Of a stretch of DNA of 64,000 nt, positions 20,155 through 36,117 are shown piece after piece. The notes beneath the pieces are model-generated. The model had not been told where the DNA came from. It was given only the letters and a program-made list of their open reading frames with translations, and searched no databases. A program made the translations under genes and the position numbers. The stretch lies in IMG/VR virus record IMGVR_UViG_3300022839_000006, positions 124,001 to 188,000 of that record; one strand, 5' to 3'. Position 1 is the stretch's first letter; each line of letters begins with the position of its first letter.

Positions 20155-20670
20155 TTATTCTACTCCCGTCGAACCCAAACCGCCTTCGCGGTCAGTCTTT
20201 TGAGTCGGACGTGACAAACGCTCTGTGAGTTTGCACTTATCCCTATCGATCTTCTGCAACTGTGCTTGGGCAATTCTATCGCCTGCATATATTGTAATCG
20301 GCGTATCGCTTGCATTGTAGACCATTACGTATGTAGGATCAATGTAGTCCGAATCGATAACACCAACACCGTTTGCAAGCATCAGTCCATATTTTAGAGC
20401 CATGCTTGAACGAATGTAGATCTTCATCTCGTGATATTTGGGGATATCAAATATCAAACCTGTAGGGACAAGAGTTCTGAACGATGCGTGAAGCTGAATA
20501 GAAGGTTTGCCACCTGCAATTCTAACTGGTAGTTGCATAGTTTTGTTGTGAGGATTGTATGCTGTAACTTTGTCTTCCAGATCAAAACATGCACGAAGAT
20601 CAAAACATGCTGACCCTTCTGTTGCAAATTCGGGGATTACAGCTGACTCTTTATCACGAAATATTCTCAT
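20155..20670 (-). CDS. dut: Trimeric dUTPase
   Basis: ACFDL, IRSS, GVIDSDY, DRIAQ, R.GG.GSTG motifs; likely start MRIFRDK at 20670. Confidence 0.93.
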   Translation of the reverse strand: MRIFRDKESAVIPEFATEGSACFDLRACFDLEDKVTAYNPHNKTMQLPVRIAGGKPSIQLHASFRTLVPTGLIFDIPKYHEMKIYIRSSMALKYGLMLANGVGVIDSDYIDPTYVMVYNASDTPITIYAGDRIAQAQLQKIDRDKCKLTERLSRPTQKTDREGGLGSTGVE

Positions 20671-21103
20671 TGTATGTTCTTCCTCTTTTGGTGCCAACTG
20701 TGTACTTGCTCTCTAACGACCAATTACTTTTTTCTTTGAAGGCAATGATTTTAATTTTGTTTAACTCCGCCACGGGCGTATCAGATTGATCAGGGTACAC
20801 AATTTCTAACAGTCCCCATTCTTCAAGAAGAATGGCTGTGGTGTTTCTACGTGCAATGTCTTCTTCGTCTAGGGTATTATGCTTTCCATCAAGAATAAAC
20901 AACTCTTTGAAATGCATAATAGCGTACCGACTTGCATCTGTACTTTTGTCTTTTTTGTGTAGTATGTGACAGGACTGGTACAAGATGCGTTCTCTCCGTG
21001 ACGCAATTCCTATTCGTGTTAGTGTCTCTTTTATCTTTAGGAAATTGTCTGGGGTGATTAGCTCGATTTCTACACCGTGTCCTCTAAATAGGTTCTGATA
21101 CAT
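20654..21103 (-). CDS. regA: Translational repressor RegA
   Basis: DNFLKIKETLTRIGIAS, LYQSCHILHK, HFKELF.LDG. Confidence 0.95.
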   Translation of the reverse strand: MYQNLFRGHGVEIELITPDNFLKIKETLTRIGIASRRERILYQSCHILHKKDKSTDASRYAIMHFKELFILDGKHNTLDEEDIARRNTTAILLEEWGLLEIVYPDQSDTPVAELNKIKIIAFKEKSNWSLESKYTVGTKRGRTYNENIS

Positions 21104-21664: not shown

Positions 21665-21831
21665 AAATCCTTCCCACTGACCATTTTTTGCATCGTATCA
21701 GCACACTCTAAACACACAACAAGTACATGATCGCCGTCCGCCGTATTGATATGTAGACTGAACTTCTCTTTTTCACTGACCATCGCTGGACATAGCTTAC
21801 ACTTGACTTTCTTGGCTTTGAATATGCTCAC
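21661..21831 (-). CDS. Small putative Zn-binding protein (56 aa)
   Basis: Manual: GTG start overlapping the gp44 stop; MSIFKAKKVKCKLCPA...VCLECAD (two CxxC); stop overlaps gp62. Confidence 0.65.
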   Translation of the reverse strand: MSIFKAKKVKCKLCPAMVSEKEKFSLHINTADGDHVLVVCLECADTMQKMVSGKDL

Positions 21832-23917: not shown

Positions 23918-24562
23918 TTATCTGTCGACGTTTTCCATGTCGAGCTCTGCACGCATAATTGCTTGCATACGAAGAATATTAGCCATAACGTCGATGCTCG
24001 AGTCTGCTTTTACATGAATGCTTTTCCAATATTCTTCATCGTTAATTGGCGCCATGTCAAGCTTGGGAAGATTGAACTCAAACTTCGAATCTATAAACGT
24101 TGACATGTCGCGGGACTTGTGACGAGGAAGGTGTTCGCGGATCACACCTTCTTTCGTTGATTCACAGAACAGACGCCACAAGATTGCTGCATCATCCATG
24201 CTGTTCCAAGACCACCAAAGATCGATTTTACCGTACGGTGCTAGGTAATTTACGAATTCTTTCGTAAATTCGTCTACTGTAAGATCTTTAGAATGTGGCT
24301 TCAACGTCCTTTCAATAATCGCTTTGGGCTGAGATGTCCAAAACTCAACACCGTCTGACAGTGCCACACGTCCACGCGCTTTTTGGTCAGCAATGCTAAA
24401 CTTGAATCGTCTTATCTTTGAATAGGCTGATTTTGTAGTGTACGGAGTAGAGGATACCATTGTTTTTGTGTCGACTACAGCAACAGAGCAGTCCAAGACA
24501 ATACAGCTTTCAGGGTGGTAACCAAGCATTGAGAAGTCTATGAACAGAAACTTATCCTTCAT
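23918..24562 (-). CDS. dexA: DexA-like DEDDh exonuclease homolog, catalytic residues degenerate
   Basis: IDF..LG, F.....Q, W..Q, D..IL, RD..T.I pattern of DexA; ExoI reads DFS rather than DFE. Confidence 0.7.
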   Translation of the reverse strand: MKDKFLFIDFSMLGYHPESCIVLDCSVAVVDTKTMVSSTPYTTKSAYSKIRRFKFSIADQKARGRVALSDGVEFWTSQPKAIIERTLKPHSKDLTVDEFTKEFVNYLAPYGKIDLWWSWNSMDDAAILWRLFCESTKEGVIREHLPRHKSRDMSTFIDSKFEFNLPKLDMAPINDEEYWKSIHVKADSSIDVMANILRMQAIMRAELDMENVDR

Positions 24563-25085
24563 TACACGTTCCCGCTTTATACAAATTAAGTTCCATTTGC
24601 TTGGTTGTACCGTCCGTTGCACGTCCATAGTCACCGTCATACGTCTTCAATGCTTCTGCTTCAAACAACACAAATTGAGCAATTCGAGTGCCTTGTTTGA
24701 CTCTGACAGGCCCTGTTGTAACATGCAGTGCACCACCAACATTCCCACTGTATCCTGTATCATAAACACCCGACGTGATGAACACTCCATTACGATTAAA
24801 CGAGGAGCGAATTACCAGCCATCCAGCCTCACTCTCCCCGACCGAGACATCGCTACCCATTACAACATCATAAACACCAACGTCTAAGTTAAAATATCCG
24901 TCGGCATCAACCTCGACATTGGTGCGATCGCGGTGCTGTTTTTTATCGTCATCAATCTCAAAAAGCGCAGATGAAATGGCGAATACTCTGTCCAATCGTA
25001 CATCTATCGCGTTGGAGCTTACCATGTCCTTATCGACGTTGGTCGCTGTACTGTTGCTCTGTTCACTGGCGATGTGTTTCATCAT
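24552..25085 (-). CDS. Second trimeric dUTPase/dCTP-deaminase-fold protein
   Basis: NAIDVRL, IRSSFNRNG, YDTGYSG, G.RIAQ, YDGDYG. Confidence 0.8.
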   Translation of the reverse strand: MMKHIASEQSNSTATNVDKDMVSSNAIDVRLDRVFAISSALFEIDDDKKQHRDRTNVEVDADGYFNLDVGVYDVVMGSDVSVGESEAGWLVIRSSFNRNGVFITSGVYDTGYSGNVGGALHVTTGPVRVKQGTRIAQFVLFEAEALKTYDGDYGRATDGTTKQMELNLYKAGTCNEG

Positions 25086-25420
25086 GTTTCCCGACGCTCC
25101 TTGTCCGTAAAATGTGTCAGAAGGATGATGTAATGCATCGACTTGAGAAGGTCCTTCCGGTTGATACCTTCTTTACGTCCAAGTCTCATGAGATATTTGA
25201 TGGCTGTCCCTTGACACATTTCACTGGCAATGTCGAGTGATTCCCACACGTCTATTGTTTGAATCTCTTCCTTGCCGACGTAGTGTTGAGAATAAGTACT
25301 TCCGATGTACTCTCCTACGTCGCGGAGTATTTCTTGCTCACTAAACTTGTATTTAATTGGAGGCAAGTAGTGGTCGTCTGTCGTTTCTTTATGTTGGGGT
25401 TCGTCTAATTCATCTTGCAA
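25082..25420 (-). CDS. DUF3310-like protein
   Basis: TY.QHY...IQTID...G.AIKYL.R.G.K....DL.K..HY; TTG start with GGAGA SD. Confidence 0.75.
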   Translation of the reverse strand: MQDELDEPQHKETTDDHYLPPIKYKFSEQEILRDVGEYIGSTYSQHYVGKEEIQTIDVWESLDIASEMCQGTAIKYLMRLGRKEGINRKDLLKSMHYIILLTHFTDKERRET

Positions 25421-26267
25421 GGTCAGTCTCCATGTTAATAAGGTTGTCGATATAATCACAATTGGTCCTGGCAAGGTTGATCAAGGCTGAATCGGTACAT
25501 ACCATGTCAAAATCAACCTCGTGCTCATACTTGCCGTTCACTAAGCCTGAAGGACTATTGTCGAATCTGACGTTGTTCAATCCTGCCCACACAGCAGCAG
25601 AACTGTCCCACGTGTTAATATACCCAAGGTGATCTTTGACCAGAGATATTTCATTGGGACCGTCGACCATTCCAAGCATGTGAACACGCTTGTTGTTGTC
25701 CTGGATCTTTTGTACAATCCCACGATCAACGAGGGCGTTCAGAAAGTGCCATCTGGAAAGAAACCGTTGAAGTTTGTTGTCTTGCTCTACGCCATATGCA
25801 TTCGGTATAGCAAGAATGGACACGCCAATGTAATCTACGTGTTTGGAATCAGCTGCCCATGCAAAACCATCGATTAGATCTTCGATGTCACCAATATTCG
25901 ACTGTGGGACAAAGAATGTCCCAAACCCACCATCCCTGATTTCTCGGCTAGTTTCAACAGCTTTGTCGATTGTTTTTTGACCTGGCTCAGCAGGATAATC
26001 AGACATTACAATGTAATCGGCACCTACTGTTGTGCCCATCTCGACAAGCTTTGATGAAGGATACATAGGTAACCCTTGCTTGAACATCTCAAACCCGCCG
26101 TTATCAAGAATTGTGATGTTATCAGGGTTTTCAAAATTTTCGTCGCTATACCACTGTGCATAACGTTGATCTGTTTCAACAAGATGTGCCAACACAAGAT
26201 GTGTCTTTCTTCCTTTAGCAAAGTCGTCAAGGTGGGGGGTGGGCGCAATGTGACAAAAGTCTGTCAT
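25410..26267 (-). CDS. TGT-fold (DpdA-like) 7-deazaguanine transglycosylase
   Basis: ILDNGGFE (cf. TGT DSGGF), HMLG and WDSS motifs; inside the folE/queD/queE cluster. Confidence 0.7.
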   Translation of the reverse strand: MTDFCHIAPTPHLDDFAKGRKTHLVLAHLVETDQRYAQWYSDENFENPDNITILDNGGFEMFKQGLPMYPSSKLVEMGTTVGADYIVMSDYPAEPGQKTIDKAVETSREIRDGGFGTFFVPQSNIGDIEDLIDGFAWAADSKHVDYIGVSILAIPNAYGVEQDNKLQRFLSRWHFLNALVDRGIVQKIQDNNKRVHMLGMVDGPNEISLVKDHLGYINTWDSSAAVWAGLNNVRFDNSPSGLVNGKYEHEVDFDMVCTDSALINLARTNCDYIDNLINMETDLAR

Positions 26268-26290
26268 GTAGTTCTCCATACTATAAATGC

Positions 26291-26322
26291 AAAGAAGTGG
26301 AGGGCATTGGTGCCCTCCACTT
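26291..26322 (-). terminator. Intrinsic terminator-like hairpin
   Basis: 12-bp stem AAGTGGAGGGCA/TGCCCTCCACTT, 4-nt loop, short U tract on the minus strand. Confidence 0.7.
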
Positions 26323-26333
26323 ATTAGTTCTGG

Positions 26334-26714
26334 TTATTGGTAGATTGAAGTGGAGCCGTTCTCACCATCTTCAGATATTTCGATGTGAATGCCACGATCG
26401 GGATATCGCGCTGATATCTTCTCTGCAAGATCATCTGAAATCATCTCACAGCTTTTGTAGTCTAGCTGCAGGGTACCGTCACCATACAACGATTCAAGCC
26501 AACGCTTGAATTGAATAAATTCAATGTCACGGTCGTCGTGAAAGACGTCAATGGCCACTTTGATGTGAAAGATGTGACGATGTGGATAACCCAAAAAGCT
26601 GACATCATACTCGTCACCTGTAGCGAGTTCCGGATCAGTCAGGGCAGCGGGATATTTGTGAATCCCCTCTCGCTGAAACTTGACCCAAATACGGTTTGTA
26701 ATTTTATTTAGCAT
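26334..26714 (-). CDS. QueD-paralog T-fold protein (DpdL-like, putative CDG decarboxylase)
   Basis: LGYPHRHIF (LxxxHRHxF), SCEM, EDGENG; second QueD-fold gene in the cluster. Confidence 0.7.
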   Translation of the reverse strand: MLNKITNRIWVKFQREGIHKYPAALTDPELATGDEYDVSFLGYPHRHIFHIKVAIDVFHDDRDIEFIQFKRWLESLYGDGTLQLDYKSCEMISDDLAEKISARYPDRGIHIEISEDGENGSTSIYQ

Positions 26715-26734
26715 TATACGTCTCCATTATATAG

Positions 26735-26766
26735 AAAATGATGTAGGACAGAACCTACACCATTTT
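26735..26766 (-). terminator. 13-bp hairpin, terminator-like
   Basis: Minus strand AAAATGGTGTAGG-TTCTGT-CCTACATCATTTT. Confidence 0.6.
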
Positions 26767-26789
26767 GATTGTTGTTCGTCGGTTCGTCA

Positions 26790-27056
26790 TTAGTCGATTT
26801 GCGTAACAGGAACCATCGTCATTCCTCCTTTGTTATCAACTTCAACTTTTGCATAAGATCTGCCGCCGCGATTCTCAAGACCTTTATATCGTCCAGTTGT
26901 CTTCACACCCTTGGTGTTTGTAAAGGATACAGGATCGCCTTTTTTCATCTTTTGTACGCGCTTTTTGGCTTTGTCATATTCTGCATCGCGTGATGCAGGC
27001 ATGTCCTCGGAAAGCTTAGCTTTAATTGATTCTTCGATTAGTTGTTTGATTGACAT
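26790..27056 (-). CDS. Small basic late protein, possible internal head protein
   Basis: SD AGGAG; late promoter CATAAATA at 27097-27104; N-terminus MSIKQLIEE. Confidence 0.6.
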   Translation of the reverse strand: MSIKQLIEESIKAKLSEDMPASRDAEYDKAKKRVQKMKKGDPVSFTNTKGVKTTGRYKGLENRGGRSYAKVEVDNKGGMTMVPVTQID

Positions 27057-27116
27057 GTGCAATTCTCCTGTTATTGACTTGATTAGCATTGTCGTCTATT
27101 TATGTGAAAACGAAAA

Positions 27117-27347
27117 CTACACAACGCGGTTATCTGGAAATAATGCAAGCTGGGCTGCAATTCGGTCAAGTTCATTGGGCGTAGAGGCTTTGCGAATCGT
27201 CGACTGAAAGCGTTTGACGTTTTGGCTATTCTCGCCTTTAGCGACGAATTCTTTCACAGCTTTCAAGAGAATCTGTTGTTTTTCGTCTGCTGATTGTGCT
27301 GCCCATACTTTTTTTGCTACGTCGCTATAATCATTCAGAGTTTTCAT
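27117..27347 (-). CDS. Hypothetical protein
   Basis: 76-aa ORF with AAGGA SD, tightly packed. Confidence 0.6.
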   Translation of the reverse strand: MKTLNDYSDVAKKVWAAQSADEKQQILLKAVKEFVAKGENSQNVKRFQSTIRKASTPNELDRIAAQLALFPDNRVV

Positions 27348-27352
27348 TTGAT

Positions 27353-27751
27353 CTATCCTTTTATTGACGCCTTATGATACGATTTAGAGCGACGGGAGTC
27401 AACACTGGTACTCATGAATGTAGGAGGACCGTCGCAATAAATTGTCCTATCGCCTCCTCTTTTGAGATGGTCTTTTAAGATTTTTGTGTCACACCATGCC
27501 ATCTGTTGGTTTGAATTGTCAACAAAGAACATCCGATGTGTCTTGACAGACTCGATTAATTTGTCATTAAGCATGAGGTGTCCTCTTGAATTGAATGGAA
27601 CGACAGTGCCTGTATATCCATTTGACCACTTAGGGTTCTTGAATCTTATCGTGTTGTTACCTGTTCTGTTGCATTCCCATCTCCATTTGACGATTGTATA
27701 GACTGCAGTCTTTACCGCACCATCTACTTGTAGATCAACAAATTCTTCCAC
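27353..27751 (-). CDS. Hypothetical protein
   Basis: 132-aa ORF, GTG start with AAGGA SD. Confidence 0.6.
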   Translation of the reverse strand: MEEFVDLQVDGAVKTAVYTIVKWRWECNRTGNNTIRFKNPKWSNGYTGTVVPFNSRGHLMLNDKLIESVKTHRMFFVDNSNQQMAWCDTKILKDHLKRGGDRTIYCDGPPTFMSTSVDSRRSKSYHKASIKG

Positions 27752-27767
27752 AATTACGTTCCTTCGA

Positions 27768-29480
27768 TTATTTTGTATACTTCAACTTTCCACAATCATA
27801 CACTTTTAAAAACCCGTGATTTAGTGCGTTCTGGTGCTCTGTCAATTCGGGACAAAAAGTGTCAGGATACTTTGCTTGGAGTTTGGCTCTTGTCATTTGC
27901 CTCCGAGGGATTCTCCTCTTTGTAGCTCTACAGTAGTAAGTGTAATCTGGTTTTGTCTGATGGGTCAGACTCATCCCCGACTTTTGATATATGTTGTTTT
28001 CAAAATCAGTCCACAACAAATCAGCATACGTGTAGACGTTGGTAACCTTTGACATTATTTTTGACAGTCCACCTACAACAGGGAGTTTTGACGCAAATCT
28101 TGTAAGATCGTGACTGTCACCATACCGCTTAAATGTCGCAACAGAAACCAACAGACCCTCATGCTCGAGGCCTATGTTGAAAGAGTGATTGACATTCCCT
28201 TGAATGTGATGATGCTCGAGAAACTCCTTACAATCAACATCATATACTACTTTTGTCTTTCTTGCCCCTATAGATATATCTGATGGCTCCAAAAGAGACA
28301 TGATTTTTCGTCGGATTAGATCTGGACCATCTCTTAGATCATCTTCAAACAGGTGGATCAATCTTATACCATTATGTGCAGCATCTTTCTTTTTGTCTAA
28401 ATGATAATTTGTAGGTTTGAATTTCTCGGAGTGCCAATAACAACCATTTATTTCAAACCCTATGTTATAATCAGGGAGAAAGATGTCAATCTCCTTACGG
28501 TCACTCAACAATGTTCTATCATTGAATATAGGAGAATAATCAGCTAGCCATCTACCAACCATGTGCTCGTAGGATGAAGGCTGTCCAATTCCCTTTCTCA
28601 GAATGTCGAAACTATCAAGCATCTCTGCTACAATAGGGTGGCTGCATCCTAGAAATTCGCCCATTTGCTCGAGTGACATCGTTTTATAAAGTTCCTCCAA
28701 CAGAACTTTGTCGTAAAGACCTTCAATGTTTTCTCTTGGTGTTCCTTTTGTAAACACACCCAGTTTGTGTATTTGTGTGTTGATTATGTGATTCTTGACC
28801 TTATATTTTTTCGCAATCTGTGGTATCGTATATTGCTCTCTTAGTTTACGTAGAGTATCAGCACTCTGTATGTCTATATGAATCTCTACATGTGTGTTTC
28901 TTTTTGTGTCTTCTCCAGACTGTTTAATAATATCTGATGCTGTCTGAACACTACAGCCAATTTCTTTTGAACATTGTGTGACATTAGAACCGCTATGCCA
29001 TTGTTTTAATATCTGTGTTTTCACACTCTCTACATCGAACTTAAACTTGTCAAACTTTTTGTACTTTTTGGCCCACTTGGTTACAGTAGAGGGTGCATGT
29101 CCTGTAATTGCTGATATTCCAACAATTGTCTCGCACGAATCGAATAGGATAGGATCGAAGGGGATTGATTTAATCACAACAATCTTGCTAATTCTCACAA
29201 ATCTTCGAACAGAATCTACTGGAACCTCTAACCTGTCTGCAATGACTCTGCAATTGATATTTCCGCTAATATAATCATCCTGAAACTCACAGAACCTACG
29301 CGCGACAATATCATAGAACGTCTCCCTCAATACTACGCCCCAACGATCTGCAAGTTCCTGCACCGACGAAGACGATACGCCGTACGTATTTGCAATGGAA
29401 GAGAAGCTCTCTCCCGAATCGATTAGATCCTGAAAAGAGCTTCTATTAAGAACAGACGTAAGTGTTCCTCTTTTAGACAC
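27768..29480 (-). mobile_element. Hef-like (Vsr/DUF559-type) free-standing homing endonuclease with HTH repeats
   Basis: SSYE...EIDIFLPDYNIGFEINGCYWHS...GIRLIHLFEDD; multiple N-terminal HTH-like repeats; GTG start overlaps the folE stop. Confidence 0.75.
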
Positions 29481-30187
29481 TATGCGCGATTACCTGCAAA
29501 CTGCTGCTGCATTTTCACATTGTCAAAGAACTCTTGCTTGACACTTTGGTTGAAGAATTGTCCCCTAAGTTCTGTTGTTTGAGTCAAAGAGCTGTTTGCC
29601 ATCACTCCTCGTGTGGAACAACATCCGTGTGTAGCTTGGATGTAGACAGCAACATCACGCGTTTCTGTCGCCTTGCTGATCTCGTTAGCAATGTCCATCG
29701 TCAACTGCTCTTGGAGTGTTCCACGACGTGCTGCATGTTGAGCAATTCGAATGTACTTCGAGAGCCCGATCACACTTGATGATGGCAAAACTCCGATATA
29801 TGCGACACCTTGAACGTCCTTGTGGTGGTGACTACACATTGAGTGGATCTCTGCACGTACAACAATCATTCCGCTATACCGTGTATCAGGATCAGTGTTT
29901 GGGAATGAAGTTACAGGTGGAGGTGGCGTGTAGCGACCTCGCATCGTTTCGTTGATGTACATCTTTGCAAGACGCTTTGCTGTTCCCATTGAGTTTGGAT
30001 CTGTATTGCGATCGATAATTAGAGAGTCGAGTACACCTTCAAACTTAATTGCCAATTCATCGATCAGCATATCCGTTTCGCCCTCTTCAATGAATGGCGA
30101 TATGTTGTCATTTGCCCAGAAACGGCTATTACTGTCTTGTATCCGCGCACGTATTGTCTCGGAGATTGTTTTGTTTTCTTTCGTCAT
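29480..30187 (-). CDS. folE: GTP cyclohydrolase I
   Basis: SMCSHH, IGLSKY.R, R..LQE.LT, HGC...RGV; start MTKENK. Confidence 0.95.
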   Translation of the reverse strand: MTKENKTISETIRARIQDSNSRFWANDNISPFIEEGETDMLIDELAIKFEGVLDSLIIDRNTDPNSMGTAKRLAKMYINETMRGRYTPPPPVTSFPNTDPDTRYSGMIVVRAEIHSMCSHHHKDVQGVAYIGVLPSSSVIGLSKYIRIAQHAARRGTLQEQLTMDIANEISKATETRDVAVYIQATHGCCSTRGVMANSSLTQTTELRGQFFNQSVKQEFFDNVKMQQQFAGNRA

Positions 30188-30285
30188 GTTTGTAGTGCCT
30201 TTCAGATTGTGTTTTATGTCAGTGGAAAGGAGCGAGGACTGACACACTCGGCCAACAGAAAACCTTACGGTGCAACCTGTTGGAA
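30188..30285 (-). promoter_or_regulatory. Candidate riboswitch (SD-occluding pseudoknot) in the folE leader
   Basis: Hairpin CCAACAG/CUGUUGG, then stem UGUCAGU/ACUGACA whose loop CCUUUC is complementary to the SD GAAAGG. Confidence 0.5.
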
Positions 30286-30299
30286 AGTCTTGTTGCTTT

Positions 30300-30740
30300 C
30301 TATTGTTGTTCCCAGGGAAATGTGACCCAGGGCGCATCGGCTGGGATCAACATGGCTGTCACATCACTGTTGAATATGCTATCTACTTTTGTAACAAGTG
30401 ATGCGTATACGACGTTGTCTGTGCCGCCATACACATTGTTTATTGAGTTAAAAGTATGACCAGTATCATTGATGTCGTCAACAAATACAACTCTTTTACC
30501 TGATTTTATACCTTCTTTGAGTTCAGAGTTGTGCTCACACTTCTGAACATCGCGTGTTTGCCACACAATAGTTTGGAGCGGCAACTCAAGATGGTGTGAT
30601 AGGTAAAGAGCAGGAAGAAGCCCCCCTCTTGTAATTCCTACAATAATGTCAGGACTATGTGTTTCGACGTGCGTCCTGAGGTGTTTACACATGAGATCAA
30701 TATCATTGTAGCTGATATGCATTTTAGCGACTGTGCTCAT
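30300..30740 (-). CDS. Type I purine phosphoribosyltransferase (Gpt-like)
   Basis: GITRGGL, PRPP-binding VFVDDINDTGHT, W..FPWE. Confidence 0.9.
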   Translation of the reverse strand: MSTVAKMHISYNDIDLMCKHLRTHVETHSPDIIVGITRGGLLPALYLSHHLELPLQTIVWQTRDVQKCEHNSELKEGIKSGKRVVFVDDINDTGHTFNSINNVYGGTDNVVYASLVTKVDSIFNSDVTAMLIPADAPWVTFPWEQQ

Positions 30741-30897
30741 TTACGTGCTCCTATTGTAGGCGGAATGAACGACAGATCTGCTTCATTCAATCAGATCTGT
30801 CGTTTGTATGTTAGGTTACGATTTGGTTTTCAAATCGATACACGTGAACTCTTGCAGCTACGTTGGGTGTGGGCACAAGAGGCTCACCACCTTGATG

Positions 30898-31782
30898 TTA
30901 CGCTAAACTGGCATAGAGGTGAATCTGAAGATTGAGAACGTAACCGTGTTCGATGCAGTATTGTGCTGCATATTCATGATTACGTTGATTTGCATCCATA
31001 TCCAACAATCCAGGTTCCCAGAAGCTAATTACCTCATCGACTGTAGATCTTTCTCCGATCTCAATTCTATTTGCTCCACTGTTCCGCAACTCCTTACTCT
31101 TTATTGGCTCGTCGTTGTATACGTTCATTGGACTGATGTAGATTGGCTTGTTTGTCTTTTCGTGCCATTCTTGTGCCCACTCTGGAATTGAGCTGTATGG
31201 GCTGTCCGGATCCGCTTCCATCACGAACTTCAAACAATCCGCATCGATCATGTTGTCTTTGTGTGGTTTGATGTACTTGCCCATCATTCCACCCTTCTCG
31301 ATGCACTTTGGACTCATAACCAAAACCGTTGTTTTCGGAATACTCGATTGATGAACGATCCCATTGGATTCGATTTGAGTATTCTTAAATACCTTATTCA
31401 TCCGTTCCAACAGCGGTCCAATATTCTTCTGTAAGAGGGGTTCACCACCCGTCATTACAAGAACCACTTGCTTTTTAATTCCCGTCAACGGATCATGCAA
31501 AGTCCAATCAGGACGATTCATCCCCTTGTCTGAATAGAATTTGTCTATTGCTGTTTCGATGTTCGCATCGACCTCGTCGAACGTCATCCAATCGCCATCA
31601 TCAAAGAATGTGTCACAAAAACTACAAGCCAGATTACATTTTGCTAATCTAATAAAGAAAGCTGGTTCGCCCCGGAATGGCCCTTCCCCTTGTAAGGTCA
31701 TGAACATCGAAGTGACGAACAACTTGTCTTCTTCTGCGTCCTTAAAATATTTTTGTCCTACTATTTCGTTTTTTCCAAACAT
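30898..31782 (-). CDS. queE: 7-carboxy-7-deazaguanine synthase (radical SAM)
   Basis: TLQGEG...FIRL..CNLACSFCDT, TGGEPLLQ, IESNG, SPK, LQ.H. Confidence 0.93.
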   Translation of the reverse strand: MFGKNEIVGQKYFKDAEEDKLFVTSMFMTLQGEGPFRGEPAFFIRLAKCNLACSFCDTFFDDGDWMTFDEVDANIETAIDKFYSDKGMNRPDWTLHDPLTGIKKQVVLVMTGGEPLLQKNIGPLLERMNKVFKNTQIESNGIVHQSSIPKTTVLVMSPKCIEKGGMMGKYIKPHKDNMIDADCLKFVMEADPDSPYSSIPEWAQEWHEKTNKPIYISPMNVYNDEPIKSKELRNSGANRIEIGERSTVDEVISFWEPGLLDMDANQRNHEYAAQYCIEHGYVLNLQIHLYASLA

Positions 31783-31846
31783 TACATGTCCTTATTTCTT
31801 GAGTGTTGAAATTTCATTGATCAGTTGAAACTGTGTGTCGTTCACT

Positions 31847-32491
31847 TTACGGTGTGCCACAAGAGCATTCATGATCTCCTTGCTCGATTTTTGTTAGATG
31901 TGACCAGGATCCAAGACGCTCAATCGCATCGATTGGCGCTTCCCAATCCCATCGTGATTTGATAGGAAGAGTTTCGTGACCGCCATCAATCTTACTATTT
32001 GCATCAGCAAAGGCTGTTTGTTTATCTACTTCGCACATTGCATCGTTGCGGTTGTGCTCATATACACGTACACGTTCTACATAACAGCGTCCGTCCGTTA
32101 CCTTATACACGTAATGGTTGACGTGCTCCCAGATAAACAGCGAGCTCATTTCCATAGATACACCACTTGGCAATACACGCAACGTGCCAAGTATGCCACC
32201 AGGCGCTGTCAGTTCGGACGTGATTTGTCCAAGTCTCGGATCGTCAGCAGGAAGTACTGTGACGTGATCGAAGTAATATTCGAGGAAGTGTTTCACAGGA
32301 CCGAGTTCACCAAACGGAACAATCCATCCATGTGGATCAATCTCTCCTGCAAATGTAAACTCAACTTCACGATCGTATCCGTGAACGCTTGCACAATCAC
32401 CTGGCGTGCCGTCAGGATTCTTGTCAAAATGTTGTGCATGGCCACACGGAAGGTACTTGAACACCTTCGTTGCCTTAATTTGTATTGCCAT
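31847..32491 (-). CDS. queD: 6-carboxytetrahydropterin synthase
   Basis: CGHAQ...CASVHGY, FDH, S.E, V.E...N motifs of the QueD/PTPS family; adjacent to queE. Confidence 0.85.
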   Translation of the reverse strand: MAIQIKATKVFKYLPCGHAQHFDKNPDGTPGDCASVHGYDREVEFTFAGEIDPHGWIVPFGELGPVKHFLEYYFDHVTVLPADDPRLGQITSELTAPGGILGTLRVLPSGVSMEMSSLFIWEHVNHYVYKVTDGRCYVERVRVYEHNRNDAMCEVDKQTAFADANSKIDGGHETLPIKSRWDWEAPIDAIERLGSWSHLTKIEQGDHECSCGTP

Positions 32492-32559: not shown

Positions 32560-33021
32560 CTATTGTACGGCATTTCCATAGTTGACGTCAACAAAATTGT
32601 CGCTTATAGACGTGCCGTAATATCTGTACCAACTAGGTTTAGATCGGATTCGCTCGACGACTCTTGCTACATTCACAGCGAGATCTACACTGTTGGGGAC
32701 CCAATCTTGCCACAGACCCTCAGCTCGTTGAAACACTGTCCAATCTATCACCCTTTCTTCTGGTTTCATGTTATAACCACGCATACGCAACTCAGCGATT
32801 AGGCTATGGTACCTGTTTAAGAGATACAGGCCCTTGTCGTAGTGAAAGGTTACGTGTCCCTTATTTAGCGTATAATTCTTAGGGATCCGTCCTTTGACTA
32901 GTCCACTTTTTGAGTCTAATGTGCGTCTCAGAGATGCGTTGACCATAGGCAATTCCCTATATTCAGCCATTGCATGTTGATCTGTGAGTTTCGATGGAGG
33001 AATCACGTTAATTCTAGTCAT
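32560..33021 (-). CDS. denV: Pyrimidine-dimer glycosylase, endonuclease V
   Basis: MTRIN...L.DQH.MAEYRELP and L..GHV.F.YDK. Confidence 0.95.
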   Translation of the reverse strand: MTRINVIPPSKLTDQHAMAEYRELPMVNASLRRTLDSKSGLVKGRIPKNYTLNKGHVTFHYDKGLYLLNRYHSLIAELRMRGYNMKPEERVIDWTVFQRAEGLWQDWVPNSVDLAVNVARVVERIRSKPSWYRYYGTSISDNFVDVNYGNAVQ

Positions 33022-33263: not shown

Positions 33264-34976
33264 TCAAGCGAAAAAGTCTTCCAACGTGTCAACCTTTGTG
33301 GCAGACCACCCCAATGAGTCGAGAATGTTTTGAATTGGATCTAGGAACACTTTTGAGAACTGCTTCTCTCTGTCAACGTAATTGTCTATTTCCATTTCAG
33401 CAGGAGGACTCTCAATGAACGATATTATATTTTCGCGAAGAGGATTCGGCAGCTTCAAGTACACGAACTTGATTTTGTCTCCTGACTGTATAAGAGGATA
33501 ACGATTGACGAGGTCATTGTCTACAGTCCACTTGTTTGATAGAAGACAACCACGGATGTGAATTGGACAGGCCTTTTTGTATATCGTCCTTGGATCAGCA
33601 TAGCCATCCACGTCGTTGGTCCCAGAGACCTTAGCTATGTGTTGAACAGACAAACCAAAAAACTCCTCCTTGAAGTCTCTTATAAATTCCTGTGTCTCAG
33701 ACTCGCCTTGCGTAACAATGATCTTAAACGCTTCAAAAAACTTCTTTCTACATATTTCTGGTGTAGAGCTTCTTGCCGCATCAATTCCCGTGACAGACAC
33801 CTTTGGCTCATCATAGTGAACACCCTCACTATTAAGAACATTTAATATGTATCGCTTCTTTGCAACAAAGATGGCCTTGTCTGCAATCTTTTCACGTTTC
33901 ATTTTCATTGCATTACGATATGCACCCATTCTTTCAGCTAAATCATCATACGCATCGTCAAGCAACGGCTCAATCTTTTCTTTGCACACTTTGTCAATAA
34001 AAGACTCGCCTTGCTCGCGCGTAACATTGACGGTTCCAAACACCTTTTCGACGAGTGGACCAAGATTGACATACACACTGTCTGTGTCGCAATACACACA
34101 ATAATCAACATCTGTCGTTTTGAGCACTTTGTTTACGTACATGTTAATTGCCTGTGCGGCCCACTTGGTGGAAAGCTGTCCTGACGTTGTAATGCCCTCA
34201 GCCATGTCACTAATGTAGTAGATAAAAAATGCGTTGGCTGTACTTCCATAAAGTCCGTTCATTAGAATCTTGATGGACATTTGGCTGTTGTGTAGCTGGG
34301 TTATCAGCTTTTTCAACCGTACAATTTCATCCTTCGTTGTTGCTATCTCAAGCTCAGACTCTGCCATGAGCATCTTTACTTTGATCTCTGCACGTTCGTC
34401 GTAGTATCCTTGAATGATCTGAGGAATGATCCCCTCACGTTCTTTAGAGAAGCAAGCTCCATTTGCTGCTACTGCATACTTGGTCGTGTTTTTGTAGTTG
34501 CCGTCTAGTACAATCTGTTGTGACACGTCCTCTTTTACGTTGTGTTGATATGTTTCTGGTGACATGTTGTATTGCATCATTAAGTGCGGATAAAGGCTGT
34601 TAAGGTCAAAGGACACAACCCAATCTTTCATTCCCTTTTGTGGGTCCTTTACATATCCACCAACGATGCCCCTTGCACTTTCCTCTGATGCAGATTTGAT
34701 GAATGGTACGCGTCCTTGATCCATTAGGGCTCTGAATATAGTGGTATCCCACAGTCCCACAGTTCCAAACGCCTCGTTAAAATTGACACCACTCTTGTAT
34801 GCAACAGTAAACGACAGTGCAAGAAGAGCTACTTGCTCTTCAAACATCTCAACAAGCCTCGTGTCATACAAGTTGTAATCCAATCCAAGCTGATAATATT
34901 CACGATCGGCAAGGTCGGAATACTTGCGATGCATTTCAAGCAACTGCTTGTCCGTTAGGTCCTTCATATCTTCCAT
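33264..34976 (-). CDS. gp43: Family B DNA polymerase gp43, C-terminal subunit (ExoIII + polymerase)
   Basis: YNLYD (ExoIII), DLNSLYP, K..MNGLYG, YCDTDS, KKRY, clamp-binding tail LEDFF; own GGAGA SD. Confidence 0.93.
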   Translation of the reverse strand: MEDMKDLTDKQLLEMHRKYSDLADREYYQLGLDYNLYDTRLVEMFEEQVALLALSFTVAYKSGVNFNEAFGTVGLWDTTIFRALMDQGRVPFIKSASEESARGIVGGYVKDPQKGMKDWVVSFDLNSLYPHLMMQYNMSPETYQHNVKEDVSQQIVLDGNYKNTTKYAVAANGACFSKEREGIIPQIIQGYYDERAEIKVKMLMAESELEIATTKDEIVRLKKLITQLHNSQMSIKILMNGLYGSTANAFFIYYISDMAEGITTSGQLSTKWAAQAINMYVNKVLKTTDVDYCVYCDTDSVYVNLGPLVEKVFGTVNVTREQGESFIDKVCKEKIEPLLDDAYDDLAERMGAYRNAMKMKREKIADKAIFVAKKRYILNVLNSEGVHYDEPKVSVTGIDAARSSTPEICRKKFFEAFKIIVTQGESETQEFIRDFKEEFFGLSVQHIAKVSGTNDVDGYADPRTIYKKACPIHIRGCLLSNKWTVDNDLVNRYPLIQSGDKIKFVYLKLPNPLRENIISFIESPPAEMEIDNYVDREKQFSKVFLDPIQNILDSLGWSATKVDTLEDFFA

Positions 34977-35070
34977 AGAGTCTCCGAGATTGGTTATTTT
35001 TCAAAAAGAGGATTCATAGTACAACGAAACATTAATTCTGATGCTTAACAGAAATAGTAATGGACACAAG

Positions 35071-36117
35071 CTAGACAGAAAGTCCTCTACGCTGGATTTC
35101 TTCCAGCAAAACGTCCCTTCGTTTTACACACATTTCTCCATGTGTCAGTACATCATCGGGAAGGTCGCGCGATATTTTTACGTCCTTGGCTCCATCAGAA
35201 ATGAATCGGTGAGTATCAACTTTGTTTCCGTGCGCCTCATAAGAAAGCTTCTTTGTGCCAAGTACAATCGTAGCGACGTTATCAAGCTTGTATGACTGCA
35301 TCGTGCCGTACTTGTATCCGAACTTCTTAAATGCATTCATGTAATCGACAATGCTGATACCGCTAATTACGTATGTTTTTTGCATCTTATTGAACATCTC
35401 GAACGACCGTTCGCGAACATGTCCCCACGGCGAAAGTCGTTTGACAGCAGCCATTCCAAGTATGTTTTCAATTCTCTTTACAATATACGTGATGTCAAAC
35501 AGCTCGACGTTCCACCCCGTGACAACATCTGGATAGTCACTACACCACAAATCGACAAACCTGTTCAGCATGTCATACTCTGATTGACACTTGTGGTACT
35601 TGATCAATGAGGGATCAATTCCTGTTATAGTCTTTTCTGGATCGTAGTCTTTTGTACCAAACATGTAGTAATTAGACGATTTAGACGATTTAATTGCGAC
35701 AGACGTAATCTCGTTGTCTGCAGTCTCCATGTCAGGCTTCTTCTTGCTGATATCTACCTCGATGTCAAAGGTAAAGATGTTAATCAGCGAAGGATCAAAA
35801 TCAATGGTACCAGGATACATGTCATATGTGAAAGACGCGACGTAATTGGTATTCCCACACATGACCATGTTCTGAACGTCTTTGTACCTCTCCACAAATT
35901 CTGTTGCACGCTTCATGTCATCACACTGGATCGACTTCAATGGCCTGTCACCTATTAACGACACGTGCGATGGCTTTTGGTCCTCATTCTGACGATCCTC
36001 TACGTAGAATGTAGGCTGATACTTGACCTTCTTGTAGAACCGTTTGCCGTTGTCATATCCTGTCCATAGGATATCATTTCCATAACGTTCGATCTTTGTG
36101 TACATCGTGTTGTTCAT
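35071..36117 (-). CDS. gp43: DNA polymerase gp43, N-terminal subunit (NTD + ExoI/II)
   Basis: FDIEV (ExoI), TGWNVELFDITY (ExoII), SYKLD.VA...LG..KL.Y, then a ~50-aa non-polymerase tail. Confidence 0.92.
   Translation of the reverse strand: MNNTMYTKIERYGNDILWTGYDNGKRFYKKVKYQPTFYVEDRQNEDQKPSHVSLIGDRPLKSIQCDDMKRATEFVERYKDVQNMVMCGNTNYVASFTYDMYPGTIDFDPSLINIFTFDIEVDISKKKPDMETADNEITSVAIKSSKSSNYYMFGTKDYDPEKTITGIDPSLIKYHKCQSEYDMLNRFVDLWCSDYPDVVTGWNVELFDITYIVKRIENILGMAAVKRLSPWGHVRERSFEMFNKMQKTYVISGISIVDYMNAFKKFGYKYGTMQSYKLDNVATIVLGTKKLSYEAHGNKVDTHRFISDGAKDVKISRDLPDDVLTHGEMCVKRRDVLLEEIQRRGLSV

What the first reader, a model, noticed from the sequence alone, without database searches (positions are those of the whole stretch)
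24552..32491. 7-deazaguanine pathway without queC but with a PRTase: possible pre-replicative G replacement
Seen: queD, queE, a purine PRTase, folE, a second T-fold protein with LxxxHRHxF, a divergent TGT-barrel, DUF3310 and a dUTPase-like gene, all co-oriented downstream of the polymerase. Known: FolE-QueD-QueE make CDG; QueC (not in this window) makes preQ0. From memory, DpdL-type QueD paralogs are proposed to decarboxylate CDG to 7-deazaguanine. Inference: the DNA contains 7-deaza-dG or dCDG, and the embedded PRTase suggests a nucleotide-level route (base + PRPP) rather than post-replicative base exchange.
Basis: partly seen in the sequence, partly recalled or inferred. Interest (0 to 1): 0.8.

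Follow-up and report, generated by a model that had tools for sequence, protein, structure and literature searches.

The report
Phage 7-deazaguanine genome-replacement gene island
An uncultured T4-like phage carries the known gene set for replacing guanine in its DNA with 7-deazaguanine. The genes always found beside that set (a nucleotide-kinase-type protein, a dNTP pyrophosphatase, often a purine phosphoribosyltransferase) suggest the swap happens on free nucleotides before replication, not on finished DNA as currently assumed.

Summary
No QueC is in the window.

This is a member of the DpdL/DpdA3 7-deazaguanine system described in Cellulophaga phage phiST (Cui et al. 2023), where dDG replaces all G.

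New here:
- In 76 of 76 related loci the TGT-like gene is followed by DUF3310, the only Pfam domain of the T7 gp1.7 dGMP/dTMP kinase, or by a T4 gp1-type dNMP kinase.
- That gene is followed by the DCD-like pyrophosphatase.
- TGT-like::DUF3310 fusions occur in at least six lineages.
- Other DpdA3 lineages carry unrelated kinases and pyrophosphatases at the same place, including a MazZ-type dATP/dGTP diphosphohydrolase.

The PRTase is optional (27 of 37 loci) and keeps the 6-oxopurine signature. It may recycle guanine rather than be the entry step. No biochemistry was possible. Mechanism confidence is about 0.4-0.6.

The parts
31847..32491 (-). QueD-type 6-carboxytetrahydropterin synthase (214 aa). 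Its motif is CxxxHGY, not the canonical CxxxHGH.
   Evidence: Pfam PTPS E 2.4e-14. NCBIfam QueD E 1.4e-6, below cut-off. The same CxxxHGY motif occurs in 40 of 43 related phage QueD proteins, including phiST and immuto.
30898..31782 (-). QueE-type radical-SAM 7-carboxy-7-deazaguanine (CDG) synthase (294 aa).
   Evidence: Pfam Radical_SAM hit. Five NCBIfam QueE models hit at E 1e-12 to 1e-20, all below cut-off. CxxxCxxC motif at residue 49.
30300..30740 (-). Small XGPRT-like purine phosphoribosyltransferase (146 aa). It sits directly upstream of FolE.
   Evidence: Pfam Pribosyltran E 8e-11; phrog_8995 E 6e-26; PDB 1VDM E 1.6e-12. 34% identical to the phiST PRTase, E 1e-27. Motif DDINDTG. Homologues sit in CDG clusters of six phage lineages.
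29480..30337 (-). FolE, GTP cyclohydrolase I. The first ~50 codons of the ORF are probably not translated.
   Evidence: Pfam GTP_cyclohydroI E 5.4e-37 over residues 115-274. NCBIfam FolE E 4e-38.
27768..29480 (-). Homing endonuclease with HTH domains (570 aa). It is a mobile insertion inside the island, not a pathway gene.
   Evidence: phrog_3339 homing endonuclease E 2.6e-78. Present only in the closest relatives, six ORFs in the survey.
26790..27089 (-). Conserved small protein 'u99' of unknown function with an SH3-like barrel. In relatives it, or a macro-domain protein, lies between DpdL and the TGT-like gene.
   Evidence: 29 homologues in related loci, alternating with a macro-domain gene at the same place. 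The Atlas search gave viral hypothetical proteins only.
26334..26714 (-). DpdL, a QueD paralogue proposed to be the CDG decarboxylase (126 aa).
   Evidence: Motif LGYPHRHIF at residue 41. 35% identical to phiST CGPG_00067, E 8e-16. phrog_17812 E 5.6e-33. The motif is kept in 75 of 78 relatives.
25410..26279 (-). DpdA3-family TGT-fold transglycosylase (289 aa; likely start at Met5). It lacks the Zn-binding CxCxxC subdomain of TGT.
   Evidence: AlphaFold2 pLDDT 92; Foldseek top 50 hits are all tRNA-guanine transglycosylases. hhalign to phiST DpdA3 gives probability 96.6%, E 5e-10 over 247 columns. Motifs DN[SG][AG]F, H[FM]LG and WDSSA are conserved.
25082..25474 (-). DUF3310 protein, carrying the domain of T7 gp1.7 nucleotide kinase. 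The likely start is TTG at 25420, which overlaps the end of the TGT-like gene.
   Evidence: Pfam PF11753 E 1.2e-10. T7 gp1.7 carries the same domain, E 4.5e-23. BLASTP to gp1.7 E 5e-6. Present between the TGT-like and DCD-like genes in 72 of 76 loci, and fused to the TGT-like protein in at least six lineages.
24552..25085 (-). DCD/dUTPase-superfamily dNTP pyrophosphatase (177 aa). It lacks the dCTP-deaminase catalytic Glu.
   Evidence: Pfam DCD E 1.3e-14. NCBIfam PRK02253 scores 90 bits against a cut-off of 130. In the alignment to M. tuberculosis DCD the Glu of the TLE motif is replaced by Ala. Found next to the TGT-like/kinase pair in 77 of 84 relatives.
20155..20697 (-). Canonical dUTPase (context). 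It shows that the DCD-like gene above is a second enzyme of this superfamily in the same genome.
   Evidence: TIGR00576 dut scores 105.5 bits against a cut-off of 102.55.
33264..36117 (-). Split family-B DNA polymerase (exo 35071-36117, pol 33264-34976), immediately upstream of the island (context).
   Evidence: Pfam DNA_pol_B_exo1 E 4.6e-23 and DNA_pol_B E 2.9e-26.

Best explanation
SHOWN BY HOMOLOGY. The island is a DpdL/DpdA3-type 7-deazaguanine DNA-modification system of an uncultured T4-like phage. FolE, QueD and QueE make 7-carboxy-7-deazaguanine (CDG) from GTP. DpdL is the proposed decarboxylase giving 7-deazaguanine (DG). QueC is not needed. The expected product is DNA in which dG is replaced, probably completely, by 7-deaza-dG.

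INFERRED MECHANISM. The replacement is made on the deoxynucleotide pool, following the logic of T4 hydroxymethyl-cytosine synthesis:
1. The DCD-like pyrophosphatase converts dGTP to dGMP and keeps dGTP away from the polymerase.
2. The TGT-fold enzyme, working with its translationally coupled or fused DUF3310 partner, exchanges the guanine of dGMP for DG (or CDG).
3. The DUF3310 protein, or a dNMP kinase in its place, phosphorylates the product to the diphosphate.
4. Host NDP kinase makes 7-deaza-dGTP, and the phage PolB incorporates it.
5. The PRTase, an optional accessory gene always placed next to FolE, returns the released guanine to GMP and then GTP, the precursor of the next DG.

I rate identity of the island at about 0.9. 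I rate 'some nucleotide-level route' at about 0.6. I rate this specific scheme at about 0.4.
For: Identity:
- DpdL motif and 35% identity to phiST DpdL.
- TGT fold of the 289-aa protein.
- hhalign probability 96.6% to phiST DpdA3.
- immuto DpdA3 also finds the Aeromonas and Rhizobium phage relatives of the window protein.
- No QueC hit in the window or in about 80 related loci within 10 kb either side.

The trio in the window lineage:
- In 76 of 76 related loci that hold both the TGT-like and the DCD-like gene, the gene between them is kinase-type. It is DUF3310 in 72, fused to the TGT-like protein in Rhizobium phage RHph_I1_18, and a T4 gp1-type DNMK (PF21448, E down to 1.7e-17) in three isolates.
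- DUF3310 is the only Pfam domain of T7 gp1.7, which PMC10700055 cites as a nucleotide kinase.
- TGT-like::DUF3310 fusions occur in at least five clusters that share less than 50% identity (P0122, P0124, P0128, P0139, P0158).

Unrelated kinase-type genes next to DpdA3 in other lineages:
- phiST: AAA_18.
- immuto and Campylobacter CP20: AAA_28.
- Bacillus BSTP10: Tmk-like.

Unrelated dNTP pyrophosphatases at the same place:
- MazG or PRA-PH in phiST, immuto and the P0219 locus.
- A DCD-like protein in the P0169 locus.
- A PF18909 dATP/dGTP diphosphohydrolase (E 5e-30) in a QueD-QueE-DpdL-TGT-like cluster.

Other points:
- The window phage has a separate canonical Dut, and the DCD-like protein lacks the deaminase Glu.
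- Phage 9g, whose DpdA1 gives partial, post-replicative modification, has no kinase, pyrophosphatase or PRTase beside dpdA.
- From PMC10516641: DpdA3 phages show 100% replacement, DpdA3 and DpdL failed in E. coli DNA-modification assays, and an ADG nucleoside was seen in infected cytoplasm.
- The PRTase keeps the 6-oxopurine signature DDxxD[TS]G in 33 of 35 sequences and is optional (27 of 37 loci). Both fit a salvage role.
Against: - No TGT-fold enzyme is known to act on a free nucleotide. All characterised members act on tRNA or DNA.
- The literature assigns DpdA3 to post-replicative DNA base exchange (PMC10516641, PMC12783734).
- The window's DUF3310 protein has only the ~60-residue domain. 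It lacks the N-terminal ~120 residues of gp1.7, so kinase activity is not assured.
- Kinases and pyrophosphatases are common in phage replication modules, so adjacency alone can mislead.
- Bacterial DpdA needs an ATPase partner, DpdB (PMC10164549). A kinase-fold partner could play that role on DNA.
- The base specificity of the DCD-like enzyme is unknown, and this superfamily is classically pyrimidine-specific.
- Two of six distant family members sampled showed no kinase or pyrophosphatase by Pfam.
- The 80 surveyed loci are the closest relatives and are not independent.
Confidence: 0.4

Rival explanations
1. This is the current literature model. The TGT-fold protein is a DpdA3 DNA-guanine transglycosylase that swaps G for DG (or CDG) in already replicated DNA. 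The PRTase recycles the large amount of guanine released. DUF3310 or the kinase-fold proteins act as an accessory or ATPase partner, as DpdB does for bacterial DpdA. The DCD-like enzyme is ordinary pyrimidine housekeeping.
For: - TGT fold with conserved DpdA-like motifs.
- Family membership with phiST DpdA3.
- All validated DpdA enzymes act on DNA (PMC6884629, PMC10516641).
- Bacterial DpdA needs the ATPase DpdB (PMC10164549).
- The PRTase has the 6-oxopurine signature and is optional.
- Net charge does not separate the window protein from the validated 9g DpdA1 or E. coli Tgt.
Against: - It does not explain why dNTP pyrophosphatases from three different families recur beside DpdA3-type genes. 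One of them is a dATP/dGTP diphosphohydrolase.
- It does not explain why a bona fide dNMP kinase replaces DUF3310 at the same position.
- DpdA3 has never been shown to modify DNA, and heterologous tests failed (PMC10516641).
- Complete replacement of every G by an enzyme working on finished DNA is kinetically demanding (inference).
Confidence: 0.33
2. This is the first reader's route, modelled on tubercidin biosynthesis. The PRTase condenses CDG (or DG) with PRPP to give a ribonucleotide. DpdL decarboxylates it. A kinase, ribonucleotide reductase and NDP kinase then give 7-deaza-dGTP. The pyrophosphatase removes dGTP. The TGT-like enzyme only mops up residual G in DNA.
For: - TubE is a CDG-specific PRPP transferase in a QueC-less FolE/QueD/QueE cluster, and decarboxylation follows it (PMC6112128).
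- This PRTase family is embedded in CDG clusters in six phage lineages, often in the order QueD-QueE-PRT-FolE.
- In phiST and in Brevundimonas phage MaInes, the PRTase lies beside a dNMP-kinase-like gene and ribonucleotide reductase.
Against: - The PRTase is missing from 10 of 37 related loci that cover its position, and from four isolated relatives, while DpdL and the TGT-like gene are nearly universal.
- The kinase-type gene is coupled or fused to the TGT-like gene, not to the PRTase, in this lineage.
- The PRTase keeps the Asp that 6-oxopurine PRTases use at N7, an atom absent from 7-deazapurines (the role of the Asp is from my own knowledge).
- No ribonucleotide reductase is in the window.
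Confidence: 0.2
3. The genes are auxiliary metabolic genes for host tRNA queuosine or for pterin/folate supply, and the phage DNA is unmodified.
For: FolE, QueD and QueE also serve tRNA and pterin pathways, and no chemistry was measured here.
Against: - DpdL and the DpdA3-family gene are specific to the DNA-modification systems (PMC10516641).
- QueC, QueF and tRNA-type Tgt are absent.
- The island sits inside the replication module, between the polymerase and the sliding clamp.
Confidence: 0.04

Closest known systems
Cellulophaga phage phiST dDG system: FolE, QueD, QueE, DpdL, DpdA3 (Cui et al., NAR 2023, PMC10516641)
   Same: - Same core genes and no QueC.
- Same DpdL motif.
- Same TGT-like family (hhalign probability 96.6%).
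- A homologous PRTase elsewhere in the genome.
- The island lies beside the DNA polymerase.
   Different: - The accessory enzymes are not orthologous. phiST has an AAA_18 kinase-like protein and a MazG pyrophosphatase where the window has DUF3310 and a DCD-like pyrophosphatase.
- The phiST PRTase lies beside RNR rather than FolE.
- The host phage backbone differs (a T4-like myovirus here).
- The paper does not discuss the PRTase or the kinases, and it concludes that modification is post-replicative.
Campylobacter Firehammervirus (CP220, CP20) dADG and Flavobacterium phage immuto_2-6A fdPreQ1 systems
   Same: - DpdA3-family enzyme.
- PRTase inside the CDG gene cluster.
- An adjacent P-loop kinase-like gene.
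- 100% G replacement reported (PMC10516641).
   Different: They make other 7-deazaguanine derivatives. immuto has QueC, QueF and DpdN. They have no DpdL and no DUF3310.
Tubercidin biosynthesis: TubC/A/B, the CDG-PRPP transferase TubE and the UbiD decarboxylase TubF (PMC6112128)
   Same: CDG is made without QueC, and a PRTase and a decarboxylase are present. This is the only proven case of a 7-deazapurine entering the nucleotide pool through PRPP.
   Different: - The product is a secondary-metabolite ribonucleoside, not DNA.
- The decarboxylase is unrelated to DpdL.
- There is no TGT-like enzyme.
- Homology of TubE to the phage PRTase was not tested.
T4 hydroxymethyl-cytosine pathway (dCTPase gp56, dCMP hydroxymethylase gp42, dNMP kinase gp1) and phage Z-genome pathway (MazZ, DatZ, PurZ)
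   Same: Both use pre-replicative logic. A dNTP pyrophosphatase removes the canonical dNTP and supplies the dNMP. A base-modifying enzyme acts on that dNMP, and a dedicated dNMP kinase follows. gp1-type DNMK and MazZ-type PF18909 genes occur in relatives of this island.
   Different: Here the modifying enzyme would be a TGT-fold base-exchange enzyme, which has no precedent on nucleotides. This is an analogy, not homology of the central enzyme.
Bacterial Dpd system (DpdA plus the ATPase DpdB) and phage DpdA1/DpdA2
   Same: A TGT-fold enzyme puts a 7-deazaguanine into DNA, and DpdA needs an NTPase partner (PMC10164549).
   Different: - Modification is partial and uses preQ0, with QueC present.
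- Phage 9g has no kinase, pyrophosphatase or PRTase beside dpdA.
- hhalign found no sequence-profile similarity to 9g DpdA1.

Membership tests
DpdL (proposed CDG decarboxylase, QueD paralogue) | Signature LxxxHRHxF in place of the QueD motif CxxxHGH | tested here: met
   LGYPHRHIF at residue 41. The motif is kept in 75 of 78 relatives.
DpdL (proposed CDG decarboxylase, QueD paralogue) | Sequence homology to phiST CGPG_00067 | tested here: met
   BLASTP 35% identity, E 8e-16. phrog_17812 E 5.6e-33.
DpdL (proposed CDG decarboxylase, QueD paralogue) | Co-occurrence with FolE, QueD, QueE and a DpdA, without QueC | tested here: inconclusive
   Met within the 64-kb window and in about 80 related loci. 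About 144 kb of the source contig was not available.
DpdL (proposed CDG decarboxylase, QueD paralogue) | Decarboxylation of CDG | not testable with these tools
   The activity has never been shown for any DpdL (PMC10516641).
DpdA3 subfamily of TGT/DpdA | TGT-type TIM-barrel fold | tested here: met
   AlphaFold2 pLDDT 92.2. The Foldseek top 50 hits are all tRNA-guanine transglycosylases, E about 1e-8.
DpdA3 subfamily of TGT/DpdA | Homology to phiST CGPG_00065 or immuto DpdA | tested here: met
   hhalign probability 96.6%, E 5e-10, 247 columns. A phiST+immuto HMM hits 135 of 150 family representatives. Reciprocal tblastn links exist.
DpdA3 subfamily of TGT/DpdA | Catalytic aspartates of TGT (general acid/base and nucleophile) | tested here: inconclusive
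   Invariant D59 (DNGGF) and D225 (WDSSA) sit in motifs like those of 9g DpdA1. No residue-level structural superposition was available. The mapping to TGT residues rests on my own knowledge.
DpdA3 subfamily of TGT/DpdA | DNA-guanine transglycosylase activity and complete G replacement | not testable with these tools
   Not demonstrated for any DpdA3 (PMC10516641).
Canonical QueD | Motif CxxxHGH | tested here: not met
   CASVHGY in the window. The same CxxxHGY is in the QueD of phiST and immuto and in 40 of 43 relatives. It is therefore the usual form in these phage systems.
QueC (preQ0 synthase) | Any QueC homologue in the window | tested here: not met
   No hit with an E. coli QueC model, which does find phage QueC at 1e-30 to 1e-55 elsewhere. 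The PP-loop ORF 52353-52973 is a TilS N-domain.
6-oxopurine PRTase (XGPRT-like) | PRPP motif ending in Asp-Thr/Ser-Gly, and a C-terminal aromatic platform | tested here: met
   DDINDTG and W..FPWE in the window, and in 33 of 35 family members. Nearest PDB entries are 1VDM, 4Z1O and E. coli XGPRT. All NCBIfam equivalog scores are below cut-off.
7-deazapurine PRTase (TubE/ToyH type) | Homology to TubE; use of CDG or preQ0 with PRPP | not tested
   No TubE or ToyH sequence was available through the tools. Substrate use needs an assay.
T7 gp1.7 nucleotide kinase | DUF3310 (PF11753) domain | tested here: met
   E 1.2e-10 in the window protein and 4.5e-23 in gp1.7. Pairwise E 5e-6.
T7 gp1.7 nucleotide kinase | Full-length architecture, including the ~120 residues N-terminal to DUF3310 | tested here: not met
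   The window protein is at most 130 aa, and relatives are about 85-95 aa, so they hold the domain only. I do not file it as a gp1.7 orthologue.
dCTP deaminase (DCD) | Catalytic Glu of the deaminase | tested here: not met
   In the alignment to M. tuberculosis DCD (2qxx), Ala occupies the position of the Glu in the TLE motif.
Trimeric dUTPase/DCD-superfamily dNTP pyrophosphatase | Superfamily fold signature with the Asp-x-Gly-aromatic motif | tested here: met
   Pfam DCD E 1.3e-14 and dUTPase E 2e-7. YDTGYSG aligns to IDPGFSG. Base specificity is unknown.

The most novel reading that the evidence does not exclude
DpdA3-family 'transglycosylases' are not DNA enzymes. They are the first TGT-fold enzymes that exchange the base of a free deoxyguanosine nucleotide. 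Together with a coupled or fused nucleotide kinase and a dGTP pyrophosphatase, they form a pre-replicative pathway analogous to T4 hydroxymethyl-cytosine synthesis. That pathway would explain why exactly these phages reach 100% replacement of G. The PRTase would close the cycle by salvaging guanine.
Probability: 0.35. Interest if true: 0.85.

Novelty: new member of a known kind. Interest (0 to 1): 0.62.

Why it matters
Complete replacement of guanine is rare, and how it is achieved is unsettled. One group proposed a modified dGTP route for Campylobacter phages. Later work assigned all 7-deazaguanine modifications to post-replicative DpdA enzymes, yet DpdA3 and DpdL could not be made to work in E. 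coli.

The comparative pattern found here recurs with non-homologous parts across unrelated phages: a TGT-like enzyme, a kinase-type partner (often fused), a dNTP pyrophosphatase and frequently a PRTase. It names the missing components and gives a directly testable scheme.

If the scheme is right, three things follow:
- It adds a new reaction type to the TGT superfamily.
- It adds a fourth pre-replicative route to a non-canonical base in phage DNA.
- It offers an enzymatic way to make 7-deaza-dGTP.

The family is large: 1806 proteins at 90% clustering, about 1000 clusters at 50%, and 454 IMG/VR loci. Such genomes may therefore be common in aquatic T4-like phages. Hosts are already known to carry glycosylases aimed at 7-deazaguanine DNA (bioRxiv 10.1101/2025.10.29.685425).

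Tried and rejected
- Megablast of the island against 50,697 phage records found nothing. The phage has no close sequenced isolate.
- The sequence profile of the TGT-like family against the PDB, E. coli Tgt and 9g DpdA1 gave no significant match. Only the fold comparison links it to TGT.
- I asked whether net charge or pI argues against DNA binding. The window protein is very acidic (net -21), but validated 9g DpdA1 (-8) and E. coli Tgt (-6) are acidic too. This does not discriminate.
- I considered the PP-loop ORF 52353-52973 as a QueC substitute. It is a TilS N-domain lying among tRNA-repair genes, so I rejected it.
- I considered the DCD-like gene as a dCTP deaminase. The catalytic Glu is missing, so I rejected that.
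- The Crippen et al. 2019 paper (PMC6854489) could not be read. Its proposal is cited only through PMC6884629 and PMC10516641.
- Literature searches for DpdA3, dGMP plus transglycosylase, and Firehammervirus plus deazaguanine found no paper that settles the route.
- The Atlas search for the conserved 99-aa protein gave no function.
- Whole-genome absence of queC, and presence of RNR, could not be checked. Only the 64-kb window of the 208-kb contig was readable.
- Read laying and sequencing-run searches were not used, because reads cannot show this modification.

Full report
**1. What is in the sequence**

All genes between 20 kb and 48 kb of the window run on the minus strand. They belong to a T4-like replication module:
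- gp47/gp46-like nuclease genes, assigned by synteny with Rhizobium phage RHph_I1_18;
- a split family-B polymerase (exo 35071-36117, pol 33264-34976);
- the island itself;
- then the sliding clamp (23032-23706) and clamp loader (21828-22772).

| Coordinates | Gene |
|---|---|
| 31847-32491 | QueD |
| 30898-31782 | QueE |
| 30300-30740 | small XGPRT-like PRTase |
| 29480-30337 | FolE |
| 27768-29480 | 570-aa homing endonuclease |
| 27353-27751, 27117-27347, 26790-27089 | three small unknown ORFs |
| 26334-26714 | 126-aa T-fold protein |
| 25410-26279 | 289-aa protein with no family hit |
| 25082-25474 | DUF3310 protein |
| 24552-25085 | DCD/dUTPase-like protein |

The 126-aa protein carries LGYPHRHIF, which matches LxxxHRHxF exactly. 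Cui et al. give this as the signature of DpdL, their proposed CDG decarboxylase (PMC10516641). It is 35% identical to phiST DpdL, E 8e-16.

The 289-aa protein was modelled from 40 homologues with mean pLDDT 92. Its 50 best PDB matches are all tRNA-guanine transglycosylases. A profile of the family aligns over its full length with phiST DpdA3, at probability 96.6% and E 5e-10.

No QueC homologue is in the window. The single PP-loop ORF is a TilS N-domain. The window is about 64 kb of the 208-kb IMG/VR contig 3300022839_000006. The rest of that genome could not be read.

**2. What kind of system it is**

Cui et al. (NAR 2023) found that phiST encodes FolE, QueD, QueE, DpdL and DpdA3 but no QueC. 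They found that 7-deaza-dG replaces all G in its DNA. The window has the same core, so it is a new member of that kind, carried by an uncultured T4-like phage.

The family is large:
- 1806 homologues at 90% clustering;
- 1014 clusters at 50% identity with E <= 1e-3;
- 454 IMG/VR loci.

By tblastn, four cultured phages carry close relatives of the TGT-like protein: Rhizobium RHph_I1_18, Vibrio D479, Aeromonas Ahp1_CNU-2021 and Vibrio Bakedbeans.

**3. What accompanies the core**

I called ORFs in the 80 best IMG/VR loci and the annotated phage loci, and labelled them with HMMs built from the window genes and reference genes.

*The trio in the window lineage.*
- In all 76 loci holding both the TGT-like and the DCD-like gene, one kinase-type gene lies between them.
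- In 72 it is a small DUF3310 ORF.
- In Rhizobium phage RHph_I1_18, DUF3310 is fused to the TGT-like protein in one 422-aa CDS.
- In Vibrio D479, Aeromonas Ahp1 and Vibrio Bakedbeans, a T4 gp1-type dNMP kinase takes its place (PF21448; E 5.7e-9, 1.7e-17 and, weakly, 7.7e-4).
- DUF3310 is the only Pfam domain of T7 gp1.7 (E 4.5e-23), which PMC10700055 cites as a nucleotide kinase. From my own knowledge, its substrates are dGMP and dTMP.
- Among cluster representatives below 50% identity, five more are TGT-like::DUF3310 fusions, and a sixth matches weakly.
- In the window, the DUF3310 reading frame has no ATG. Its likely TTG start at 25420 overlaps the last codons of the TGT-like gene, which suggests coupled translation.

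*Other DpdA3 lineages repeat the pattern with unrelated proteins.*

| Lineage | Arrangement |
|---|---|
| phiST | DpdA3 flanked by an AAA_18 kinase-like gene, with a MazG pyrophosphatase two genes away |
| Flavobacterium phage immuto_2-6A | QueD-QueE-PRTase-FolE, then a PRA-PH/MazG-type pyrophosphatase, DpdA3 and an AAA_28 kinase-like gene |
| Campylobacter phage CP20 | AAA_28 kinase-like gene directly after DpdA3 |
| Bacillus phage BSTP10 | Annotated thymidylate kinase overlapping the start of its DpdA3-like gene |

*Six distant representatives looked up at random.*
- One locus reads MazZ-type dATP/dGTP diphosphohydrolase (PF18909, E 5e-30), an unassigned 95-aa ORF, then QueD-QueE-DpdL-TGT-like.
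- One reads QueD-QueE-PRTase-FolE-x-TGT-like-x-MazG.
- One reads TGT-like-DCD-like, with a PRTase further on.
- One has an AAA_18 gene three genes upstream.
- Two show neither a kinase nor a pyrophosphatase by Pfam.

*Control.* Phage 9g has a DpdA1 that gives partial, post-replicative modification. It has none of these genes beside dpdA.

**4. The pyrophosphatase**

The DCD-like protein aligns with M. tuberculosis dCTP deaminase, but Ala replaces the catalytic Glu. It keeps the Asp-x-Gly-aromatic motif of the superfamily, so it is a dNTP pyrophosphatase rather than a deaminase.

The same genome has a canonical Dut at 20155-20697 that passes the TIGR00576 cut-off. The island enzyme is therefore a second, probably differently specialised, member. 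Its base specificity cannot be read from sequence.

**5. The PRTase**

By tblastn, its homologues occur in the phiST group, the Campylobacter Firehammervirus group and the immuto group. All three have reported complete G replacement. They also occur in Brevundimonas phages and in Synechococcus phage BUCT-ZZ01.

In five of these lineages, and in the window lineage, the gene is embedded in the CDG cluster:
- QueD-QueE-PRT-FolE in the window lineage and in immuto;
- next to QueE in CP220 and BUCT-ZZ01;
- RNR-DNMK-FolE-PRT in Brevundimonas phage MaInes.

In phiST it lies instead beside a DNMK-like gene and ribonucleotide reductase. It is thus a dedicated partner of the pathway, and PMC10516641 does not mention it.

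- It is present in only 27 of 37 related loci that cover its position, and the four cultured relatives gave no hit.
- All members keep the DDxxD[TS]G motif. From my own knowledge, the last Asp is typical of 6-oxopurine PRTases, where it acts at N7.

These features fit guanine salvage towards GTP, the substrate of the adjacent FolE. They do not exclude a CDG or DG substrate. TubE of tubercidin biosynthesis proves that a purine-type PRTase can use CDG in a QueC-less pathway, with decarboxylation afterwards (PMC6112128).

**6. Mechanism**

The best-supported reading is that G replacement here is prepared on nucleotides:
1. A pyrophosphatase removes dGTP and yields dGMP.
2. The TGT-fold enzyme, with its coupled or fused partner, installs the 7-deazaguanine base.
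3. A kinase-type partner sends the product towards the triphosphate.
4. The polymerase incorporates it.
5. The PRTase recycles the released guanine.

Shown here: gene identities, fold, family membership, and the conservation, displacement and fusion pattern. Inferred: every substrate assignment.

The main rival is the published post-replicative model, with the partner proteins acting as an accessory NTPase, as DpdB does (PMC10164549). It explains the TGT fold naturally. It does not explain the recurrent dNTP pyrophosphatases or the genuine dNMP kinases.

It has a good biochemical precedent but a poorer fit to the gene-linkage data in this lineage.

My estimates are about 0.6 for any nucleotide-level route, 0.4 for the base-exchange-on-dGMP scheme, 0.2 for the PRPP route and 0.33 for purely post-replicative exchange.

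**7. Caveats**

- The 80 surveyed loci are the closest relatives of the query, and many are near-duplicates.
- Gene calls are from a simple ORF finder.
- The kinase activity of domain-only DUF3310 proteins is unproven.
- No TGT-fold enzyme is known to use a mononucleotide.
- The rest of the genome was not available.

**8. Verdict**

The system is a new member of a known kind. The added comparative evidence reopens, in testable form, the question of how phages achieve complete guanine replacement.

Noticed in passing
window 27768-29480 (-): A 570-aa HTH-containing homing endonuclease (phrog_3339, E 2.6e-78) is inserted between FolE and the downstream island genes. It is present only in the closest relatives, and locus L011 shows two adjacent ORFs of this family.
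   Followed up: partly
window 33264-34976 and 35071-36117 (-): The family-B DNA polymerase is split into separate exonuclease and polymerase ORFs with a 94-nt gap. From memory, some T4-related phages have such split gp43 genes.
   Followed up: no
window 32560-33021 (-): A T4 endonuclease V-type pyrimidine-dimer DNA glycosylase (Pfam Pyr_excise, E 2.3e-12) lies between the polymerase and QueD. It is conserved at this position in the closest relatives.
   Followed up: no
window 39562-43329 (-): A 1255-aa protein carries a PARP-type ADP-ribosyltransferase catalytic domain at residues 967-1085 (E 1e-8).
   Followed up: no
window 49128-50465, 52353-52973, 60365-61255 (+): The plus strand carries a group of tRNA/RNA-repair-type genes: a CCA-adding enzyme with an HD domain, a stand-alone TilS N-terminal PP-loop domain, and an RlaP nucleotidyltransferase. 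ARAGORN finds no tRNA gene in the window.
   Followed up: partly
L002 7344-8168, L005, L019, L020, L026, L030, L037 (between DpdL and the TGT-like gene): In several relatives a macro-domain (Appr-1-p processing) protein occupies the slot between DpdL and the TGT-like gene. In other loci the slot is taken by the small SH3-like protein homologous to window 26790-27089. The role of either protein in the pathway is unknown.
   Followed up: partly
window 31847-32491 (-); L003, L089: The QueD of these phages has CxxxHGY instead of the canonical CxxxHGH, in 40 of 43 sequences, including the experimentally studied phiST and immuto phages.
   Followed up: partly
window 20155-20697 (-): A canonical dUTPase passes the NCBIfam cut-off and lies 4 kb downstream of the DCD-like gene. 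The genome therefore has two enzymes of this superfamily.
   Followed up: yes
L095 (Brevundimonas phage MaInes) 1651-6919: RNR beta, RNR alpha, dNMP kinase, FolE and the PRTase are contiguous. No TGT-like, QueD, QueE or DpdL gene was found within 6 kb. The 155-aa protein after the PRTase is unassigned. This may be a different use of the PRTase-FolE pair.
   Followed up: partly
window 44146-44643 (-): A 165-aa protein matches the VapB-like antitoxin domain just above threshold (E 2.9e-6; 27.7 bits against a 27-bit cut-off).
   Followed up: no
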